A DNA stretch of 64,000 nucleotides from Bugula neritina. Taxonomy: Eukaryota; Animalia; Bryozoa. The position numbers and the translations under genes were made by a program. Location: positions 10,096,722-10,160,721 of the forward strand of contig OZ037766.1 of NCBI GenBank assembly GCA_964035545.1. Direction: 5' to 3'. Every line of letters begins with the position of its first letter. Position 1 is the first letter of the stretch. Positions 3,035 through 63,989 of the stretch are shown here, in pieces. Below the pieces are notes generated by a model. The model did no database searches. It saw nothing but the letters and a program-made list of their open reading frames with translations, and had not been told where the DNA came from.

Positions 3035-4883
<1,849 letters not shown>

Positions 4884-5819
4884 AATTCAAGATTGAACAC
4901 TGTAATGCTATTATAACAGATACTGCAGTGCATTTGCTATACAATTATCATAATAATATTGACTGGATGCCCCATTGATTTAATTCACTGATATTATATG
5001 ACATACAATGAGTACTGCATACCCTTAATTTAAAATCTTTTCTTATATTTGATTTCAGAATATCTGAGCCTGTGCAATATATTCATTTTGTACAGCATAA
5101 TGAAGGAATTACCAACTCTGAATAATGGGATCATTGAAATGAATATTGTATAAAATAATAGCCTTACATTTGTGTACAGTAGAAGCAATCTTGGTATAAT
5201 TCTAGTATAATAGCACTCAATTTAGACCGCAATGTGTTTAGAAATATTATAACACTAATGTAATACCATTTGCGTCAGAGCTCCACTGATACCAGGAATT
5301 TTATTGTACATTTCTTTCCCATATTTACTTTGAGCAAAAACCAATCTAATGAGAATGTCTTATTTGTAAAATTTTTAAAACAACCATTTCATTAAAGTAC
5401 ACTCTTTTATTATTTAACAGTTTGAGTAAGCCTGAGAACTTAAAATATGCGACTTCCACAGCCCTGGGTTCCAATGCATCATTAAGTAAAATTGTAACTC
5501 ATTTTTATCCGCACTTGCATAGTATGGATGTTGAAGTACAGATTGTAGCTGTATGAGACTATACCTTTGCATTTTCTTTATATGATCACTGCAGCACGGA
5601 ATGTATGCCTAAACAGCTAAAATTTATTGAACTATTTAAGGCTCTATAGACAGCAGGTATATGATAGAATATAGATAATATACCATGCAGTACAATGCTG
5701 ATATCACTGTTATCTATATATAGGGGAGATGATAATAAAAAACTGTTGCCTTCAAGTATAAATAAAGAAGTAGGTGTCTTCAAAGGTCTCAGTTATTAAA
5801 TATGCTGGAAAAATAATAT

Positions 5820-5864
5820 ACACGCGCGCACACACACGCACACGCACACACACACACACGCACA
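5820..5864. repeat. Imperfect (CA)n/(CG) microsatellite
   Basis: acacgcgcgcacacacacgcacacgcacacacacacacgcaca. Confidence 0.85.
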
Positions 5865-7306
5865 TATATTAAAGCTTTTTAGAGATGTGTACTGTTGTTT
5901 TTTATATATTATTTAAAAACATATAAAACGAAATTATGCAAAAATTTAACAGTTTGCAACTGTTTCAATGTTGCTCTTAATAAATAGGTTTAAGGGTACC
6001 TCTGTGTGAAAAAAATTGCTTTAATTCAAAAACATGGTTTATTCAAGCATATATTTTAAAGAGGTATAGCAATAAAAATGAAAATTACTAATATTTTTGT
6101 AATGTGCTACCAAATAAAATGGAATGTGATAATAGTACTAGTAATCATGTATAGATGCAAAAAGCACCAAATCTGCGATAGATGTGACTGACTTATAAAG
6201 TGCACAACCACTACTCAAAGCAACAGCAAGAAACTATTTGAAGAAGTAAAACCTAGAGTTCTTTAAGCAGGATGAAACAAGCCCAACTGGTGACAAAAAT
6301 AACACAAAAGTAGTGTCTTCGTTGTATGACTAAATCGCCGAATGCAAACAGAAAAATTTTAGTAGCCCAAGTTCTTTAATCACTCTTATGCATATTAATG
6401 GTTTGGAGCATGGGATGAAATTCTTGTGAGAACATAACTTTTTTGCTCCTGTTTTCATATAGAACACAGCCTTTATACATTACCACAGTACTTACCTAGA
6501 CTTACAAAAAGAAGAATTTTATCCAAGCATTTTAGCACCAATATCTTGTTGCCTTTTTCCCCAGGCTACAACTTGTAACTTTATAGAAACCGAGCAGAAT
6601 TGGATGTCAAACGCACCATTCGCCTTAATCCTTTCGTGGATCATTTAATGCACTATTAGAGTCACCTTTTCTGGTAGGACAACAGAGTTTTGACTACATC
6701 AGCGCACGAAAGCTGCTTGATGTTTCTTGAACTAAATATAGAAAGGAATTAATGGAGGAGGGGAAATTGGGTTAGATACTAGCTAGTAGACTTAGAAAGA
6801 GCAATGATTGTTGTAATGCACTATTGTTGCTTCCAAATATCTTCAGCTGTTTTGGAATATTGCATTGCTGTTTCTAGTTTTTGTTTCAGCATAATAATGT
6901 TGCCCCTACAAATTAACTTTTCTTGGACGGTGAGAGAGTAGCAAGTAACTTTACTGTAGTACAATGTAGCCTAACTTTCAGTTCAAAAGCCGCTAGCCGT
7001 AAACGATACGTGTCCAAGTCATGCTCTATTGATAAAAGGGAATTCGGAAACTTGAATAATCTATTATCGCAAAGGCTGGGTTTTACAAGGATACAAAATT
7101 TCCATTTGCGTTGAGATAATACGCAATAAGTTGGCTGCTGTTCATTTGCCCTAGTTACTAAATCATGAGCACTGTTGCCAGTGAATAATGATGCTTGCTG
7201 AATTATAATTATTTACATCCACTGGTATGTACTGTGCTACTTGTAATATTACTGGATGTAAAGACTATATAGCTCTTAGTTTGAGCCAGAGTTGATAGAA
7301 CATAAA

Positions 7307-7343
7307 CTCTTTGGTGAGAAATTGAGGGCCCTGAAAAGGGCCC
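7307..7343 (-). promoter_or_regulatory. Histone-type 3' stem-loop plus histone downstream element (HDE) in the presumed PNRC 3'UTR
   Basis: The minus strand reads G GGCCCT TTTC AGGGCC CTCAATTTCTCACC AAAGAG TTT. The 16-mer at 7342-7327 is the canonical histone stem-loop, and AAAGAG (7312-7307) begins after a 14-nt spacer. The flanks (TTTG / CTCAA) differ from the usual CCAAA / ACCCA. Confidence 0.55.
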
Positions 7344-8012
7344 AAAAAAATTAAAAAAGTCCTAGTACAAATTAGGTCATACAAGGGCTATTAAAATGGT
7401 TTACAGTCAGAGTAACATAACTATGAACTAAATATTGTAATATTGAGCTAGGTTCTGTAAGTGTACATCAGTCAAACATAATATGTACACTGCCTATGTA
7501 CAAGTTGTAAATTATACAGTTAAACATAATTCTAGCCATAACAGGGCAGGCAATACACAAAAGCTAATTGAATATCGAAAGTTCTTACAAGCAACCGAGA
7601 AAATAAGTTTTAAATACGCTACCTTGGCTAGGTAAGTCTTGAAATAGAAAAAACTAAAGATTATAATTATGCTATTAGTGCATTCCGAAATTGCACAAAA
7701 TAGGTCTTGAACAAAATTACAGTCATTTACTTACACTACATTAGCATTAGAAACCACTAGTCTACATCAAGTGCATACCATGGAAAAATTAAAAGTAATA
7801 CTGTATAGGCATATCTTTGTTCAAAAAATTTACAAGTATCTAATAGATATGCATTATAAATATAGAAGCATGATAAACAGCAATTATAATACTAAATTAA
7901 TTAGCTATGCTGCTCCAATTGCAAAAATGATGAGAAATGGACTTGTCAGTAAGGCTATAAAAATATATCTGGGAATGAACATGTATAGCCAGCAAAGTAA
8001 CTGTCACCATAA

Positions 8013-8566
8013 CTAATTCTGCACTTTTAGGAGAGTCTTGAGCTGCATAGCTATTTGGTCATGAAGAACTGGCACACTGGAAGAAACCTGATGATTATCC
8101 AACTTGGGTGGAGTGCTGAGTATCCAGTGGTTTGGTGGTTTTGGCAAAGATTTTGGGGATGGTGGGTCATTAAACTTCGCACCAGCAAATAGGGTTTCTC
8201 CATCATCTGAGTATGGACTTAGTTGTCGTGATCTTGCTCCAGGAATTACTATTGGAGAACTGCTTTTGCCATTTAGCACTGCACATAAACTAGCCGACAT
8301 GTCTTCTTCCACTTTGACTTTGCTCTTTGGCTTTAGCAAGCCATGCTGCTTGTCTAAGCTACTCGACAGATTTTTAATAAGTTCGTCCCCAGATGGTGAC
8401 TTTCGCTTCAACAACAAAACACAATTTTCAACACTCAAGATAATTTAAAATTCAAATAATTACTACTTGAGGCCATCAAATAGAAAATTTGAGTCAGATT
8501 TTATAAGTGACAGATAGAAACCTTAGACTCTTTGCTAGAAGGATAAATTTTCTTTTCTTTCTTCAT
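8013..8566 (-). CDS. PNRC2: Proline-rich nuclear receptor coactivator (PNRC1/PNRC2-like; DCP1-binding decapping adaptor)
   Basis: Signature [22 protein letters not shown] and C-terminal LKTLLKVQ. The start is uncertain. Best model: exon 8566-8522 ([15 protein letters not shown], or from ATG 8602) spliced in phase 0 to 8405-8013, giving ~145 aa. Alternative: ATG 8300 (95 aa). Confidence 0.88.
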
Positions 8567-9384
8567 ACTGCCTTTTCCCACAAGCACTGTGATCTGACAC
8601 ATCAAATTGATTGCGACTTCTTATATAGTAAGCCTCTAGCAGATCTTAAATCTAAGGGCAACTGTAAAAGTAGTGAAAAAACATGGTTGACATAACACAA
8701 TAGAGCAACTCAACATATGTCTTCGTAACATGTACCAAGCAGTCATTTATTGTTGTCCACAAATCTACTGCTGTAGATTTATAAGTACATCAGCGAACTA
8801 TTTTAGTTGTAACAAAATATTTTATTCATTTTATTCTTTGAGTTATTTTACATAACTACATGCAGTCCATCTAAACTATTATCATTGTAATCTGAGTAAA
8901 ATTAAAAAGACAAAATACTTTCTCTAACTAATATCATGGTAATATAGCATTACAATTCAATACATTTTAAATTGAAACTTGCATCAAATTTCAGCGCTAG
9001 AAATGGCCATAAAAGCGCTAGGCAGGCTTATAGCAACTTACAAATCACTGAAGATGAGCAGACAATACTTATACGTGTGGCTAATGCTTTGGAGAGCTGT
9101 CACTTTAAAGCTGTGTGTTTCTGATGGTCCTTAGATGCAAGGATGGATCCTGACAAAGGCTTGTACTACTAGCAGAGGATGGTGCAGCCAAACTCAGTAT
9201 AAGTTAGATGAAGAGCTAAAGCAAACAGTACTGTAAATGTATATCCATAATCGTAGGGTATACACCATGCAACATCAAAATGAATATACATTACAATATA
9301 AGAAAGTTAACATGGTGATCTAATAACATCGCAATCAAACTGCCAAACTAACCAAAACTTAGCCTTAAGCGGGGAATTTATTAG

Positions 9385-9700
9385 CATGTTAGTATTGCTA
9401 TCAACACCATTACCATTACTGATTACCGACAGAATATTTTAAAATTCATGATTATATTAATTAACAATACCAGAATTTAATAACTAATTCAATATTATGA
9501 TAAATGATAATCATAGGACACAATTTGAATTTCATAATCATAATTATGAGTTTGAACTTGAAAATTGAAGTTCCAAAGTTTATCTTAGTCCGGAAACTAA
9601 AAGTCTATAACATTAACTATAAGTATATGTATAATACGTCTAAGTTAGAGACCATTAGTTTTTGTTACACTTACCAGTTATACTTAGTAATGGTATAATA
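9385..9700. repeat. 6-bp periodic low-complexity tract (degenerate; continues beyond the hAT insertion)
   Basis: agtatt gctatc aacacc attacc attact; agtttg aacttg; actata agtata. Confidence 0.55.
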
Positions 9701-14675: not shown

Positions 14676-23994
<9,319 letters not shown>

Positions 23995-24923: not shown

Positions 24924-27900
24924 CTACCAGTTTTCGTCAGAGTCTGAGGCAAGCACCTGCTTTTCTGACACTCCAAACTGTAGTTGTTTTCGTGATTGCC
25001 TGTCTGTGGAGGTTGAAGGAGAGAATTCATCACAAGTACTAGGTGTGGCACTAGCACTACCCAAACTAGCAGACTTTAATGGTGTGGTCATGTCACTGCA
25101 AAACAAGAAGAATTATAATAATTCTATTCTGGAAATCATTACAAGACTAGTTTCTCCCTAGTTCCTGAAAGACTACATTACATTTAGATCTGCCAGCTTC
25201 ACACAATCTAGATTTGAAATTCCTGATGAAAGCCCTTTTGCCACCTAGAACCTGTTTTTATTATTACGAGGCTTGAGAGTCTGCACATGTGCACCTAGAA
25301 AATAATTTTTACGTTACAGAAAATTGAGCATATAATATGACTTACCTCTCCATAAATCTATATAGCTGAATCCTCCATGCCTTAATTAATCCATCCCAGC
25401 ACCTCCTACTGGTCTTCTTGAACTTGTTAGGAGTTCGTGGGTGAATACCCAGCTTCCTTGAATGTCTAAGGATAATAAAACTGTCATTAATATTGGCTAA
25501 CAAAATTGCCTATCACAACAAAAAACACAACTTCCAATACGTTCACACCAATTATAGAGGAGAGAACTGTGGGAACTCAACAGTCTACCTCATAGATTAT
25601 ATTGAACTGTTAAATTTATTTATTAATTTTTTCAATTATGTAGCAACACATTTTTAGGGAAGTTGGTAATACTCCACAAAGAATGACTAGTGTTGGCTTG
25701 TTGGTGTATCAACTAACTCTGCAAATCAATTCAAACGCTGTGAAGCCAGCAAACTAATATATTGTAAGTCATTATTAGCTTGACATAAACCAGCTATGCC
25801 TTAGAGCTTAGGTGAACATGGCTGACAAGGATATCCTTACCGCGGAACTGCTGCAATATACTTCTCATAGACTTCACAACTTTTGCCATAATCTATCTGT
25901 TTCTGTCTCCTCATCAACACATCCTCATCAGTGACCATCTCCTCACTATCAACACATCAGTTTATCAATAAACACAACCATAATGTAATTGTTAAATCTA
26001 AAGCATGCAGTACTGGCTTCCAACAACAATGTTTGCAATAGTGAGAGGCTAAAACATCAATATGCAGGCCCAAGTCATTTACTTTATATATGTAGAATTT
26101 TTCTAGTCTTACTAAACCCATATGAAGGGTGAATCACAAACAGGCAATCAAGGAGGAAAATTCTATTACAAACCGTGTAGGATGCCTAATTACTCTGGTG
26201 TAGTAACTTCAATTAATCTATGCCTGTGATTAACTAGTAGACAGATTGATCTACTAGTTTGATTTTATTCTCAATTGGCAACAAAAAATTATAAATCTTA
26301 AGTTAGATAAATGTTTTACCACTCTCCAAGTTAACTAGAATTTTTGCTAAAATAACAGCATAATAAATAATGATTTATTTTATTGCATGTTGAAAATTTC
26401 AATACAGCAATATGCATTGACCCTGGCTCTTGATATTTGCAGTAGATATAATATTTGCTTTCTCACTCAGCGATATTTATAGCTTGTGCTTCAAACTTTC
26501 AAATTAGCCTAGTGATTATTAAGTGTACCAATCAAAAATAGTGACTTTCAAACACCGAGTCAAAATTGAGAATCAGCGAAATCCATGTGTGCACAAAATG
26601 TATTATAAAACCAATTTCTTAGGGCATTCAAACTTAGAATTGTAGTTAGATTACATCTAAGCTATTTCTAGATATTTCAAACTGCACCAATGTAACTAGT
26701 TAGCCTTATTAGAGGTATTAGCAGGGGAGAGAACTTTGAAGCAACAAATACACATAATTTTTATAAAATGAAAGTCCAACTCGTATGTTTAAACTAAACT
26801 TGAAACTAATTAGTATGAGCGATGCTAAAAATCTATACTGCTTTCCCTAAGGAATACTTAATATATTGAAAATATGTAAATCTTCAACTTGTGAAACAGT
26901 AAAGTTACTTTTTATGAAGTTGTTTACCTATTAATTCAGGGCAAGCAACTCCAAACTATTTAAAATGATGCTACATTGCCATAAGTTTTGCATTGCCCAG
27001 GTTAGTCAAAGAAAAAAATAACCTCAGGTAGTTATCAAATTGGTAATTCAACTAGATAGTAATGAAAGGTTCTAGGCAGTAACTAGTAATATCTATAAGT
27101 TTAGGTTGTGTTTACATTCTTAGGATTATTCTAATGATTTCTATCATAGCAATAAAATATGCTGATAAATAAATAATAAGTATCAACAACTAATTTTATA
27201 TTACTAACAAAAACATATAATGCAAGTCAAACTAGTATAGTAGTGTTTTGCAGCAAAGTCTTAATGTCTGTCATATTCAGAAATCTTTAAGCATTTAAAA
27301 CTTTCAGTTTGAAATCTGTACTAAGTTGTAAAATACAAGGAAGGTAGACAATGCTAAAGCAAAAAATAACTTGCTATAAAGATATATTCACCTCGGTACT
27401 TCACTTTTTCCCAATGTCTGTAGAACCTCTGCTCGCTTTGCCTTATATGTAGATAGATCTTTTTTTACTATTTCTTGTTGACGATCATATTCATCCACAA
27501 GATCTGCCCAAGAAGGTGAACACTTCTGAGTAGATGCTCTTTAAAAACACAAGGTAACATGTGCAGACATTTAAGGCATTAGCCATAGTTTAAAATTGTG
27601 ATGAAATATATTAAGATATAAATGAACAGCTTCGACAGAACACGACTAATAAAAAACAAACAAATAAAATACTTATGCAAAAAGAATGAACATTATTTAT
27701 TAATGAAAGTTTACTAAAATACTATGATAACTTACCGTTCTGATACAAATTTATTCGGTCGTTTGTCTTTTGATTCATGAGTGCCGTAAGCATTGTAATC
27801 AGACTTTCGACTTAATGGGCTTCTCAGAGGGCTTAATGGACCTTCTCTTTGATATAACTTACTTCTAAAGTTTTAGCACAAAACAATAAATGAAAGCAGC

Positions 27901-62000: not shown

Positions 62001-63989
62001 CATTTACTGTGCACAACAGCTTAATCATTAATAAATTAATTTATAATTGTTTTAGTATTATAATTGTGCATTGTATTATTTTTGTTCAACTTCAACCAGC
62101 TTTTCTATTCTAAAGTCACTCAGTGGTGTAGGCAACCTATAGATTACAAGATTACAGACACAATAATCAATCCTCACACGTTTAATAACCTCTGTATAAT
62201 ATTAGCAACACAATCGTCTCACAAAGACACAGAGTTCATTACCATTTACTGCTGGCTAGAAGAGAAGTTGAACTGCAACTCACTTGGCCTAATCTGTAAC
62301 GATAGGATATGAGACGCAGTTGCAGTGACTGGTGACCAATATGTGCTGTGGGTGGTTTCAGTGTAACCTTACCACCTGCCTTTGTGCTCACAGTTAGATC
62401 TTTCGGATTAATATCAAACACATGGTTGATCACACAGTGCGGAAGTGAGAAGGTCGCAATACTCTACAAAGCAGAATTCTACCAGAAATGTTTCATATCT
62501 TACAACTGTTTTTTGCTGGTCCAAAATAAATGAAAGAAACTGAAGTGCTCTGGTATGGGCAGATTCATTGAGAACCCGGTGCAATATTACGAGTGAGCTC
62601 ATGAATGTAACATTTTATACATTATTTGCTACAGAAAATAAAGATCATTAGTAAGAATAAATCTCTGTTAATGACAAAAAATCCACCAGAGTAACCTGAA
62701 ATCTATCATGCTGAGGTTGCTTATGCAATATTAGTTATACTGACTGAATTCAAGTGTGCGGTCAAATCATCAAGTTAAAGAAAAAGAATATAGCATTTAA
62801 GGAAGACAAAAGTGTACCAAAGCAAAGCAAAAATATGGTGCTCATGAAAACTTACGTGAAATAAATTGGATTCACTTAAATTCCAGAATGCCTTGCAAAA
62901 ATCTATGCTACAATTTAGGGTTACTTCTACTACCTAAAATAAAGCATCAACATCACATTCTTGTTATCACAAAATACAAAATATATAGTTATTTAAATGA
63001 AGTGTAAAACAGAATAAGTTAACCATGCAAACATCAACAAATGAAAACTAATTACATTGCAGAACTCATTAATTTGAACATGTATACCTTTTCAGCTCTG
63101 TGGTCAGGATTCAAAACATATTTTCTACTAGAGAAAATAGATTTGGCCAATTTCATCACAGCTGGAGTTTTATCTTGATAGTTGTGACTGTAGGATGCCA
63201 AACTAATGTGGACAATCTCGAACGCTCGTTTTAGTGATTCACAATACTACAATATGAAAAAAATGTATACAATGTTTTATACAACTAAATCACTCAGCCT
63301 TCAATAATTTTACGTAAACACAGTGTTACAACTTTGAGAGTTACCTGAAAACCAAGTGAATGACCATAAAAGCATTCTTGGTCAATCATGTCCATTTCCA
63401 TTTGAATCTTATCAGCTACAGCCGAATCCAACAAAGTCTCAGATGGCATGAGTTGACCTAAAGGGCTGTAGTCCATTAACTTTCGAGTGTAGCGCAATAC
63501 ATCTCGGAGTTGACCGAGTGTCATTGTATAGCTATCAAGCTGCTTTACGTAATGTGACAGGCGAAAATTATAGGAATTCTTGTTGACAGAGATATATCGC
63601 ACCAATGCCATTAAATGGGTCAAACAACTTTGAACAACTCTAACTAAACTCCGATAGCCATTTGCCTGACAGTCTCTGAAATCATAATGTGGAGCCAAAT
63701 CTAATAATTCAAAGATGGAACCCTCCATATTTTCCAAGTGATCATAAAGATGACAGAATGTTGAGTAAATTTGATATCCGGTAGACGATTGATGCCATTC
63801 ACTGTCCTCATCACACTTTTCTTGAACAACATAACTTTCGACATAGCAAAGTGCTTCTTGGCGTAGTGCTTTAAAAATTTCTGCCAGTGATCTTCGGTAG
63901 TTATTCTCATGAATACCATCTTCACTCGTAAGAGAATGAGTGGTCTGATGATATTCACTGTTAGAATGTGACCTCCTGAATGCCGTCAT
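56049..63989 (-). CDS. LIPE: Hormone-sensitive lipase
   Basis: Exons 63989-63345, 63246-63088, 62933-62856, 62463-62284, 61780-61667, 61489-61345, 59057-58839, 57732-57630, 57244-56806, 56255-56049 in phase. N-terminal HSL motif [27 protein letters not shown], catalytic GDSAGG, LDPCLDD and HGFL. Confidence 0.95.
57891..57994. repeat. 13-bp minisatellite x8 (CACTACTACTGGT)
   Basis: Eight near-identical tandem units in a LIPE intron. Confidence 0.92.
59080..60270 (+). mobile_element. Decayed, internally deleted R4-like (RLE-type) non-LTR retrotransposon fragment
   Basis: Purine-rich strand with relic peptides in family order: RLERKYRI (59419), NRMFMNNQ (59527), FWQGIW (59629), ATQEQAIST (59678), [12 protein letters not shown] (59796). 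Many stops and frameshifts. Assignment rests on remembered motifs, not a database search. Confidence 0.6.
61122..61322 (+). mobile_element. tRNA-derived SINE
   Basis: A-box-like AGGTCCATGGGTTAG, B-box GGTTCAAACC (61177-61186), then body gatgttaggaagagcatccagtcg. Second copy at 30941-31119. Confidence 0.8.

What the first reader, a model, noticed from the sequence alone, without database searches (positions are those of the whole stretch)
7307..7343. Canonical histone stem-loop plus U7-type downstream element in the 3'UTR of non-histone PNRC, near SLBP
Seen: on the PNRC sense strand, ~670 nt after the stop, GGCCCTTTTCAGGGCC, then a 14-nt spacer, then AAAGAGTT. No histone ORF lies upstream. Established: this 16-mer is the SLBP-bound hairpin of replication-dependent histone mRNAs; an AAAGAG element about 15 nt downstream pairs with U7 snRNA; PNRC2 bridges UPF1 to the DCP1 decapping complex and is implicated in histone mRNA decay. 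Inference: PNRC mRNA may be alternatively processed into a non-polyadenylated, SLBP-bound, S-phase-regulated form, creating feedback in the histone mRNA decay pathway. Caveats: an extra G-C pair extends the stem, and the flanks are TTTG/CTCAA instead of CCAAA/ACCCA, which may weaken SLBP binding and cleavage.
Basis: partly seen in the sequence, partly recalled or inferred. Interest (0 to 1): 0.88.

Follow-up and report, generated by a model that had tools for sequence, protein, structure and literature searches.

The report
Histone-type stem-loop conserved in PNRC 3'UTR
The mRNA tail of a bryozoan PNRC gene, whose human relative helps destroy histone mRNAs, carries a look-alike of the signal that normally ends only histone mRNAs; it has been kept in at least eight distant lineages, so it is functional, but whether it really cuts the mRNA is untested.

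Summary
The exact 16-nt histone stem-loop lies at window 7327-7342 (minus strand), and AAAGAGTT follows 14 nt downstream. It sits 670 nt after the stop codon of a PNRC gene of the Bugula neritina complex and about 18 kb from the genome's only SLBP gene.

It is not chance, a repeat or a histone-gene relic. The region is single copy, and no histone ORF lies in the window.

In seven further PNRC lineages (46-59% protein identity where measured; one more distant) the only alignable island in the 3'UTR is this module. The module consists of:
- a U/C-rich tract;
- a 6-7 bp hairpin of histone type, with compensatory and U.G changes that fit only the sense RNA;
- a CA-containing linker;
- a purine box RRRGAGU, followed by GUUC in most lineages.

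One lineage left out of my covariance model scored E about 1e-9, and its downstream box equals this species' histone downstream-element consensus.

The module is a family of its own. Its flanks are not histone-like, Rfam Histone3 gives 19.6 bits against a cut-off of 34, and a second helix can mask the purine box. Paralogues and a spider PNRC lack it.

RNA contigs read through to a distal AATAAA, but depth falls 3-5 fold around the stem-loop. Cleavage, SLBP binding and U7 pairing remain untested.

Earlier scan notes report other non-histone genes with histone 3' ends in this genome, but not this one.

The parts
8013..8405 (-). Last coding exon of the PNRC gene (stop codon 8015-8013). It carries the PNRC motif ...[14 protein letters not shown].
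   Evidence: ORF; Pfam PF15365, E 3.5e-5. The 90% cluster of its closest relative (98% identical) holds KAF6038331.1 'PNRC1 [Bugula neritina]'. The exon's upstream boundary at 8405 comes from a spliced contig joint.
8406..8521 (-). Intron (GT..AG on the minus strand), removed in RNA contigs.
   Evidence: The joint 8405/8522 skips 116 nt with ends CT..AC on the plus strand, in runs X1 and X2. This shows that those runs hold spliced RNA of this gene.
7344..8012 (-). Proximal 3'UTR between the stop codon and the stem-loop. It holds no AATAAA or ATTAAA.
   Evidence: Hexamer scan. Over seven lineages, 2 such hexamers were seen against about 14 expected from base composition (counts; the expectation is my own estimate).
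7344..7363 (-). Conserved U/C-rich tract directly 5' of the hairpin. Histone genes have an A/C-rich CCCAAC flank here.
   Evidence: The tract is pyrimidine-rich in 7 of 8 lineages.
7326..7343 (-). Hairpin 1: 7-bp stem GGGCCCT/AGGGCCC with loop UUUC. The inner 16 nt (7327-7342) equal this species' histone stem-loop.
   Evidence: Fold energy -15.7 kcal/mol, z -2.7. Three stem pairs show changes on both sides, and the wobble pairs are all 5'U-3'G.
7305..7322 (-). Linker (with the CA dinucleotide where histone cleavage would fall, about 7322-7323) and predicted hairpin 2, in which UUCU pairs with AGAG of the purine box. The helix is weak here (3-4 bp) and 4-9 bp in the relatives that have it.
   Evidence: Folds; pair counts (helix 2 is 80% paired, against 52-59% for the whole structure in slid controls).
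7298..7312 (-). Purine box AAAGAGUU plus GUUC. It resembles this species' histone downstream-element consensus AAAGAGTTGTTC, with a 3-nt insertion.
   Evidence: histone flanks; spacing 13-14 nt in histone genes against 14 nt here; GAGU is invariant; GTTC is kept in 7 of 8 lineages; lineage L092 carries AGAGUUGUUC.
7283..7363 (-). Whole conserved module as matched by covariance model R1.
   Evidence: 82 bits; it is the only hit of R1 in the 216-Mb genome at E <= 10.
6038..6043 (-). First canonical AATAAA after the stop codon (1972 nt downstream); the likely poly(A) signal of the read-through isoform.
   Evidence: RNA contigs of run X2 extend to about 6070.
25354..25932 (-). SLBP RNA-binding-domain exons (25837-25932 and 25354-25470), about 18 kb upstream of PNRC on the same strand.
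   Evidence: PF15247 hits of 46.6 and 36.6 bits, the only ones in the genome. The translation shows [20 protein letters not shown] and SRRCWD.

Best explanation
This is a conserved cis-acting RNA module in the 3'UTR of one PNRC orthologue of bryozoans (Bugula neritina complex and unnamed marine relatives). It is a diverged, gene-specific version of the histone pre-mRNA 3'-end signal.

Proposed mechanism:
- Hairpin 1 is bound by SLBP.
- The purine box plus GUUC, 14-16 nt downstream, pairs with U7 snRNA.
- CPSF73 then cuts at the CA a few nucleotides after the stem, near window 7322. This gives a proximal, non-polyadenylated PNRC mRNA that ends in a stem-loop.
- Transcripts that escape cleavage run on about 1.3 kb to an AATAAA at 6043-6038.
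- The weak flanks and a second helix that masks the purine box would make cleavage inefficient and dependent on SLBP level, coupling PNRC output to the state of the histone mRNA pathway.

Shown here: the module exists, is single copy, is under purifying selection as a sense-strand RNA structure, and resembles histone signals in stem identity, spacing and downstream box.

Inferred: SLBP and U7 engagement, cleavage, and cell-cycle coupling.
For: 1. The 16-mer is exact and is used by all histone classes of this genome. The purine box lies 14 nt after the stem, against 13-14 nt in histone genes.
2. In blastn of the window's 3'UTR against six relatives' 3'UTRs, the best hit is always this island (E from 7e-12 to 0.05), and nothing else reaches E below 0.04.
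3. Model R1 scores 59-85 bits in all PNRC lineages. This includes L092, which was not used to build the model (59.3 bits, E 1.4e-9).
4. Stem covariation follows the path C-G, U.G, U-A. On the eight-lineage alignment, 4 pairs change on both sides against 1.8 +/- 0.9 in shuffles (13 of 500 reach it). Cells paired are 84.7%, against 52-59% in slid controls. All wobble pairs are 5'U-3'G, which would be A-C mismatches on the other strand.
5. Histone-specific identities are kept: G-C at the base in 8 of 8 lineages, a U-A top pair in 6 of 8 and a U-rich loop.
6. GAGU is invariant, and GUUC, which lies outside helix 2, is kept in 7 of 8 lineages. L092 carries AGAGUUGUUC, which equals the B. neritina histone downstream-element consensus.
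7. AATAAA and ATTAAA are depleted between the stop codon and the stem-loop: 2 seen against about 14 expected.
8. Contig depth is 3-5 fold lower distal to the stem-loop region in two RNA runs. In run X2 the summed depth is about 3480 in bin 7378-7504 and about 780 in bin 7251-7377.
9. An intact canonical SLBP is encoded in the genome.
10. Human PNRC2 is recruited to SLBP-bound histone mRNPs (PMC4132728). A masked downstream element that SLBP binding opens is described for human H4-12 pre-mRNA (PMC1635294, abstract).
Against: - Rfam Histone3 scores 19.6 bits against a cut-off of 34.
- The 5' flank is U-rich rather than A/C-rich and the 3' flank is CUCAA rather than ACCAA. From my own knowledge of SLBP and 3'hExo studies, both flanks contribute to binding.
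- Two lineages break the 6-bp stem / 4-nt loop rule: L034 has a 4-bp stem with a UUCG loop, and L052 has 7 bp with a 3-nt loop.
- The conserved spacer pairs with the purine box, which could by itself explain why both are conserved.
- RNA contigs read through the site. No contig listed ends at 7322 (70 further pieces were not shown), and contigs cannot show ends in any case.
- The site lies 670 nt into the 3'UTR of an intron-containing gene, unlike histone genes, where it is 24-30 nt after the stop.
- No convincing U7 gene was found. The best Rfam hit is 25.7 bits, and the duplex test is only 1.3 sd better than shuffles.
Confidence: 0.4

Rival explanations
1. This is a conserved two-hairpin regulatory module of the PNRC 3'UTR that is read by factors unrelated to SLBP and U7, for instance a pyrimidine-tract protein plus a hairpin-binding protein. 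Its likeness to the histone signal would then be convergent, or an ancient derivation no longer in use.
For: - The PNRC-specific flanks, spacer and U/C tract are conserved, whereas histone genes do not conserve them.
- Helix 2 explains the joint conservation of UUCUC and GAGAG.
- L034 and L052 depart from the strict histone hairpin geometry.
- Histone 3' ends score only 14-31 bits with the PNRC model.
- Read-through transcripts are abundant.
Against: - The stem keeps histone-type identities in most lineages, and in B. neritina it equals the histone hairpin in 16 of 16 positions.
- GUUC, which lies outside helix 2, is conserved and matches the histone downstream element, and L092 carries the full histone-type box.
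- The spacing equals that of histone genes.
Confidence: 0.28
2. This is an internal SLBP-binding site in a polyadenylated mRNA. SLBP, and through UPF1 the decay machinery, would bind the hairpin to tune translation or stability of PNRC mRNA, without U7-dependent cleavage.
For: - Contigs read through to a distal AATAAA.
- The hairpin is histone-like but lies far from the stop codon.
- Polyadenylated histone mRNAs that depend on SLBP, or that are made from replication-dependent histone genes, are documented (PMC11997800, PMC5100578; titles and abstracts only).
- The purine box may serve only as the 3' arm of helix 2.
Against: - Conservation of the purine box plus GUUC at histone spacing is not needed for binding alone.
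- Depth falls near the hairpin.
- The U-rich 5' flank should weaken SLBP binding (my own knowledge, not tested here).
Confidence: 0.22
3. This is a chance match, or a neutral relic of a histone-gene 3' end or of a mobile element.
For: From base composition I estimate about 0.06 chance hits of the 16-mer pattern in this genome. Histone 3' ends have been captured by other genes in this genome (loci L001, L004 and L013; scan notes).
Against: - The region is single copy.
- No histone ORF relic is present.
- The module is conserved in eight lineages while the rest of the 3'UTR is not alignable.
- The stem shows covariation.
Confidence: 0.03
4. The functional strand is the plus strand. The reverse complement reads as an anti-downstream-element, a 14-nt spacer and a terminal hairpin, which is the layout of a U7-like small RNA, or it is a DNA-level element.
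For: The mirror layout and spacing resemble U7 (my own reading).
Against: - Rfam U7 gives no hit at E <= 10 on either strand of 7000-7700.
- The spacer is not a conserved Sm site.
- Every wobble pair is U.G on the minus strand, which means an A-C mismatch on the plus strand.
- The element always lies in the sense orientation, 586-1584 nt after a PNRC stop codon.
Confidence: 0.03

Closest known systems
Histone pre-mRNA 3' processing signal (Rfam RF00032 stem-loop plus the histone downstream element bound by U7 snRNP)
   Same: The 16-nt hairpin is the same as in this species' H1, H2A, H2B, H3 and H4 genes. A purine box AAAGAG(UU), followed by GUUC, lies at the same 13-14 nt distance. A CA dinucleotide lies a few nucleotides after the stem.
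   Different: It lies 670 nt after the stop codon of an intron-containing non-histone gene, not 24-30 nt after a histone ORF. Its 5' flank is U/C-rich and its 3' flank is CUCAA. Its spacer is conserved and can pair with the purine box. It scores below the Rfam cut-off. Processing was not shown.
Polyadenylated histone transcripts that depend on, or retain, the stem-loop (PMC5100578, PMC11997800, PMC3661734)
   Same: Transcripts can read past histone-type 3' signals to a downstream poly(A) site. Here contigs run to an AATAAA 1.3 kb further on.
   Different: Those are histone genes. Here the coding region is PNRC, and the module has been kept in that gene across lineages.
Other non-histone genes with histone 3' ends in this same genome (H2B/GON4L chimeras and a DDE transposase with tandem stem-loops; scan notes s1-441585 and s1-456992; loci L001, L004, L013)
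   Same: They are non-histone ORFs followed by the species' stem-loop and downstream element.
   Different: Those sites carry canonical histone flanks (CACAAC before, ACCA or ACTACCA after), and L004 and L013 hold tandem stem-loops. They look like recent captures of whole histone 3' ends. The PNRC module has its own conserved flanks, and relatives with only 46-59% identical PNRC proteins share it.
Human H4-12 pre-mRNA, in which the downstream element is structurally masked until SLBP binds (PMC1635294)
   Same: The downstream box is predicted to be base-paired with upstream sequence (helix 2).
   Different: The structure here is only predicted. No probing or binding data exist for it.

Membership tests
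Histone 3' UTR stem-loop / histone pre-mRNA processing signal | 6-bp stem with a G-C base and a U-A top pair, and a 4-nt UYUN loop (GGCYCTTYTCAGRGCC) | tested here: met
   Exact match at 7327-7342, with none in 100 shuffles. It is identical to the hairpin of this genome's histone genes. Among the relatives, L046, L049, L051 and L092 keep a 6-7 bp stem with a 4-nt loop, L054 has 7 bp with a U-A at the position of the second G-C pair, and L034 and L052 deviate.
Histone 3' UTR stem-loop / histone pre-mRNA processing signal | Score at or above the Rfam RF00032 gathering threshold | tested here: not met
   19.6 bits against 34. There was no hit at gathering level in the window.
Histone 3' UTR stem-loop / histone pre-mRNA processing signal | A/C-rich flanks (CCAAA-like 5' flank, ACCCA-like 3' flank) | tested here: not met
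   The flanks are TTTTTTTG and CTCAA here, against CCCAAC and ACCAA in this genome's histone genes. The U/C-rich 5' flank is conserved among the PNRC elements.
Histone 3' UTR stem-loop / histone pre-mRNA processing signal | Purine-rich downstream element about 10-15 nt after the stem | tested here: met
   AAAGAGTT lies 14 nt after the 16-mer, and histone genes here have AAAGAG or AAGAG at 13-14 nt. GAGU is invariant in 8 lineages.
Histone 3' UTR stem-loop / histone pre-mRNA processing signal | Lies a few tens of nucleotides after the stop codon of an intronless replication-dependent histone gene | tested here: not met
   It lies 670 nt after the PNRC stop codon, and the gene has introns. Histone genes here have it 24-30 nt after the stop, or 42 nt for H1. 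There is no histone ORF in the window.
Histone 3' UTR stem-loop / histone pre-mRNA processing signal | Mature RNA ends 4-5 nt after the stem without a poly(A) tail | tested here: inconclusive
   Only assembled contigs were available. They read through, and depth falls 3-5 fold around the site. Contigs cannot show ends.
Histone 3' UTR stem-loop / histone pre-mRNA processing signal | Complementarity of the downstream element to the 5' end of the species' U7 snRNA | tested here: inconclusive
   No U7 gene reached the Rfam cut-off. The best hit is 25.7 bits at C4:24442919-24442985. With that candidate the PNRC box gives -7.1 kcal/mol, which ranks 7th of 28 sites, but the candidate is only 1.3 sd better than shuffled controls. 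Pattern searches found no better gene.
Histone 3' UTR stem-loop / histone pre-mRNA processing signal | Bound by SLBP | not testable with these tools
   SLBP with an intact RNA-binding domain is encoded at window 25354-25932.
PNRC (proline-rich nuclear receptor coactivator) gene family, for the host gene | C-terminal PNRC motif (Pfam PF15365) | tested here: met
   E 3.5e-5, 24 bits against a cut-off of 21. Its closest relative (98% identical) clusters at 90% identity with GenBank 'PNRC1 [Bugula neritina]'.

The most novel reading that the evidence does not exclude
One PNRC orthologue, whose human relative PNRC2 is a decapping adaptor recruited to SLBP-bound histone mRNPs, is itself a conserved non-histone substrate of the SLBP/U7 histone 3'-end machinery in bryozoans. 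Part of its mRNA would then end in a stem-loop instead of poly(A), which would form a feedback loop inside the histone mRNA life cycle.
Probability: 0.35. Interest if true: 0.9.

Novelty: new variant of a known kind. Interest (0 to 1): 0.74.

Why it matters
[quoted passage not shown] A histone-type signal kept by selection in a non-histone gene would break that rule. This is more striking because vertebrate PNRC2 acts with UPF1 and SLBP in histone mRNA decay (PMC4132728). It would give a natural example of how the SLBP/U7 machinery can be borrowed for alternative 3'-end choice and for feedback.

Even if cleavage does not occur, the module is a previously undescribed, deeply conserved structured 3'UTR element. 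It has a defined covariance model and a clear candidate protein partner, and it can be tested with ordinary RNA-end mapping and binding assays.

Tried and rejected
- **Chance match:** rejected by the genome-wide count against the reversed control and by conservation in relatives.
- **Dispersed repeat:** rejected, because window 7150-7550 is single copy.
- **Histone pseudogene relic:** rejected, because tblastn with this genome's histones finds nothing.
- **Plus-strand U7-like gene:** rejected by the direction of the wobble pairs and by the absence of an Rfam U7 hit.
- **Wider distribution in the genome:** model R1 finds only this locus. The three PNRC paralogues and a spider PNRC locus lack the element.
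- **Metagenome pattern scan:** it re-found only one known lineage, plus three chance hits without a hairpin.
- **U7 hunt:** the Rfam search and two pattern searches gave only weak candidates, none convincing.
- **First regular-expression scan of the relatives:** it missed most copies because I required a GG start and a U.U loop. Local alignment corrected this.
- **Read-level 3' ends:** not obtainable, because all runs offered were contigs.
- **Literature:** three full-text searches found no report of a PNRC stem-loop. Text look-ups in two preprints found no mention of PNRC and no named non-histone gene carrying a stem-loop.
- Only the last-exon ORF was searched, by reference.

Full report
**Observation**

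On the minus strand the window reads a T-run, then G, then GGCCCTTTTCAGGGCC (7342-7327), a 14-nt spacer, and AAAGAGTT (7312-7305). G7343 and C7326 add a seventh base pair.

- The degenerate histone pattern matches once in the window, and in none of 100 shuffles.
- Rfam Histone3 aligns to 7302-7347 at 19.6 bits, below its gathering score of 34. Nothing in the window reaches any Rfam gathering score.
- The ORF 8013-8438 (minus strand) carries the PNRC motif (PF15365, E 3.5e-5).
- Its closest relative, 98% identical, clusters at 90% identity with GenBank 'PNRC1 [Bugula neritina]'. The genome (216 Mb) therefore belongs to the B. neritina complex.
- The hairpin starts 670 nt after the stop codon.
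- SLBP RNA-binding-domain exons lie at window 25354-25470 and 25837-25932 on the same strand. They are the only SLBP locus in the genome, and the translation is canonical ([26 protein letters not shown]).

**Comparison with this species' histone genes**

The pattern occurs 42 times in the genome, against 0 for the reversed control. Among the sites whose flanks I read, nearly all lie in clusters on contigs C5 and C9, 24-30 nt after H2A, H2B, H3 or H4 ORFs, or 42 nt after an H1 ORF.

- Histone sites read CCCAAC, the hairpin, ACCAA, then AAAGAG or AAGAG after 13-14 nt. The downstream consensus is AAAGAGTTGTTC.
- The PNRC site has the same hairpin, the same spacing and AAAGAGTT...GTTC. Its flanks differ (TTTTTTTG before, CTCAA after).
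- From base composition I estimate about 0.06 chance hits of the 16-mer pattern per genome. Chance is unlikely but could not be excluded from this alone.
- Window 7150-7550 is single copy.
- tblastn with this genome's histones finds no ORF or relic in the window.

**Conservation, the key result**

Protein search found PNRC relatives at 41-59% identity, with one more distant partial match. I fetched the contigs that encode them. None of these relatives is named, and their taxa are unknown to me.

- In blastn of the window's 2-kb 3' region against each relative's 3' region, the best hit was always the island at 3'UTR positions about 653-720, which is the hairpin and box.
- The E-values were 7e-12 (L051), 1e-5 (L049), 2e-5 (L052), 8e-4 (L046), 2e-3 (L034) and 5e-2 (L054). 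Nothing else scored below about 0.04.
- The sequences show a shared module: a U/C-rich tract; a 6-7 bp hairpin; a linker containing CA; UUCUC; a purine box with invariant GAGU; and GUUC in most lineages.
- Covariance model R1, built from these, scores 59-85 bits on all of them.
- R1 finds only the PNRC locus in the whole genome.
- R1 gives histone 3' ends only 14-31 bits.
- R1 finds nothing at the three PNRC paralogues of this genome or at a spider PNRC locus.
- L092 was not used for the model. It scored 59.3 bits (E 1.4e-9), has the stem GGGUUCU/AGAACCC, and has a downstream box AGAGUUGUUC that equals the B. neritina histone downstream-element consensus.
- A metagenome pattern scan added only more contigs of one known lineage.

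**Structure and strand**

On the eight-lineage alignment, 84.7% of cells are paired, against 52-59% when the partners are slid. Four pairs change on both sides, against 1.8 +/- 0.9 in shuffles (13 of 500 reach it). The covariation score is reached by 5 of 500 shuffles.

- Stem positions pass through C-G, U.G and U-A.
- All wobble pairs have U in the 5' arm and G in the 3' arm. The structure therefore exists on the PNRC sense strand only, which removes the mirror-image reading of a plus-strand U7-like RNA. That reading also has no Rfam support.
- Single-sequence folds predict hairpin 1 in all seven sequences folded.
- The folds predict a second helix in six of the seven, pairing (A)UUCUC of the spacer with GAGAG(U) of the purine box. 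It is 3-4 bp here and 4-9 bp in the relatives that have it.
- That second helix could explain why the spacer and the box are both conserved. The GUUC lies outside it and matches the histone element, so a U7-type reading is still needed, or at least allowed.

**Transcripts**

Only Logan contigs were on offer.

- Laid on 5600-9400, contigs from runs X1 and X2 show a spliced joint that removes 8406-8521 (GT..AG on the minus strand). This shows the runs hold RNA of this gene.
- The contigs run through the hairpin down to about 6070. The first AATAAA after the stop codon is at 6043-6038.
- There is no AATAAA or ATTAAA between the stop codon and the hairpin here. Over seven lineages only 2 were seen where about 14 are expected from composition. 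The mRNAs must therefore reach the hairpin.
- In X2, contig depth is 3319 on 7513-8258 and 747 on the contig that spans 6070-7481. Summed depth is about 3480 in bin 7378-7504 and about 780 in bin 7251-7377.
- X1 shows a similar 3-5 fold lower depth further downstream.
- This fits a major 3' end at or just before the hairpin. It cannot locate that end, and contigs cannot show ends.
- Three unspliced contigs of a sibling lineage, 93-94% identical, carry the module unchanged.

**U7**

The best Rfam U7 hit in the genome is 25.7 bits, below the cut-off.

- Its 5' end could pair with the PNRC box at -7.1 kcal/mol, which ranks 7th of 28 sites.
- As a whole the candidate pairs with histone sites only 1.3 sd better than shuffled versions do.
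- Pattern searches gave nothing better.
- U7 complementarity is therefore undecided.

**Interpretation**

That this is a functional, sense-strand RNA element specific to one PNRC orthologue is well supported. I put that at about 0.9.

What it does is inferred.
- I rank histone-type alternative 3'-end formation first, at 0.40. The reasons are that the hairpin keeps histone identities, the box and its spacing match histone genes, a CA sits at the expected cut site, upstream poly(A) signals are absent, and depth falls there.
- Against it stand the conserved non-histone flanks, two lineages with off-rule hairpins, the masking helix, the read-through transcripts, and a context far from the stop codon in an intron-containing gene.
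- The main rivals are an unrelated two-hairpin regulatory element (0.28) and SLBP binding without cleavage (0.22).
- A relic or chance match, and a plus-strand element, get about 0.03 each.

**Known context**

- PNRC2 is recruited through phosphorylated UPF1 to SLBP-containing histone mRNPs, and its depletion stabilises histone mRNAs (PMC4132728).
- Histone mRNAs are described as the only known cellular non-polyadenylated mRNAs (PMC4604434).
- A masked downstream element opened by SLBP is described for human H4-12 (PMC1635294).
- Three full-text searches found no report of a stem-loop in a PNRC mRNA. Text look-ups in two preprints found no mention of PNRC and no named non-histone gene carrying a stem-loop.
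- Earlier notes of this scan list other non-histone genes with histone 3' ends in this genome. I saw some of these sites myself (L001, L004, L013).
- Those sites carry canonical histone flanks, and L004 and L013 hold tandem stem-loops. They look like recent captures, unlike the old, gene-specific PNRC module.

- I searched only the last-exon ORF, by reference, and did not join exons.

Noticed in passing
L001 (G000:C2:3225913-3225928, minus strand): A canonical histone stem-loop with histone-type flanks lies 19 nt after a 64-aa non-histone ORF (it ends ...RKRYREDSS). Its downstream box GAGAGTTTATGTT shares a 12-mer (AGAGTTTATGTT) with the PNRC box.
   Followed up: partly
L004 (G000:C3:6173655) and L013/L014 (G000:C5:13140432-13140474): Tandem histone-type hairpins about 27 nt apart, followed by AAAGAGTT, lie downstream of a non-histone ORF (...WNNDGSDTCY.YRVVGSASASSGVSKF...). 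In L004 the first hairpin differs slightly from the canonical one. This probably matches the scan's note of a DDE transposase with histone 3' signals.
   Followed up: partly
L016-L022 (G000:C9:2334190-2426860): A dispersed set of divergent H2B-like ORFs (MPLKVSSKGAKK...), each with the stem-loop and downstream element. Some are truncated or lack the box (L019).
   Followed up: no
window 25354-25932 (minus strand): The only SLBP gene of the genome lies about 18 kb upstream of PNRC on the same strand. I did not test whether this linkage is kept in relatives.
   Followed up: partly
window 21523-22544 and 3850-4170: A perfect (AC)511 microsatellite of 1 kb explains the GC-skew anomaly at 20-24 kb and the long ORFs there on both strands. 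ORFs at 3776-4197 translate as His-Thr or Cys-Val dipeptide runs, which indicates a second AC/GT repeat there.
   Followed up: yes
window 63294-63989 (minus strand): An exon encodes a hormone-sensitive lipase N-terminal domain (PF06350, E 1.4e-33).
   Followed up: no
L031-L033 against window 6686-8832: RNA-seq contigs labelled 'symbiont metagenome', and many 'organism A' runs, hold a copy of this locus that is only 93-94% identical, with indels (for example 12 nt inserted after 7101). This is consistent with deeply divergent haplotypes or cryptic species in the B. neritina complex.
   Followed up: partly
L062 (G000:C4:10100214-10100257, minus strand): A weak U7-like Rfam hit (19.5 bits; ...UUUACAGCUCUUCACUUAUUUGUCUAG...) lies just downstream of a frame that encodes another PNRC-like motif (FAPPNHWII). 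This locus was not among the paralogues found by protein search.
   Followed up: no
L073, L074 (G000:C2:20562482 and 20566392) and L075 (G000:C4:7488920): Three PNRC paralogues, 35-49% identical. Two are in tandem, 4 kb apart. None carries the stem-loop module.
   Followed up: partly
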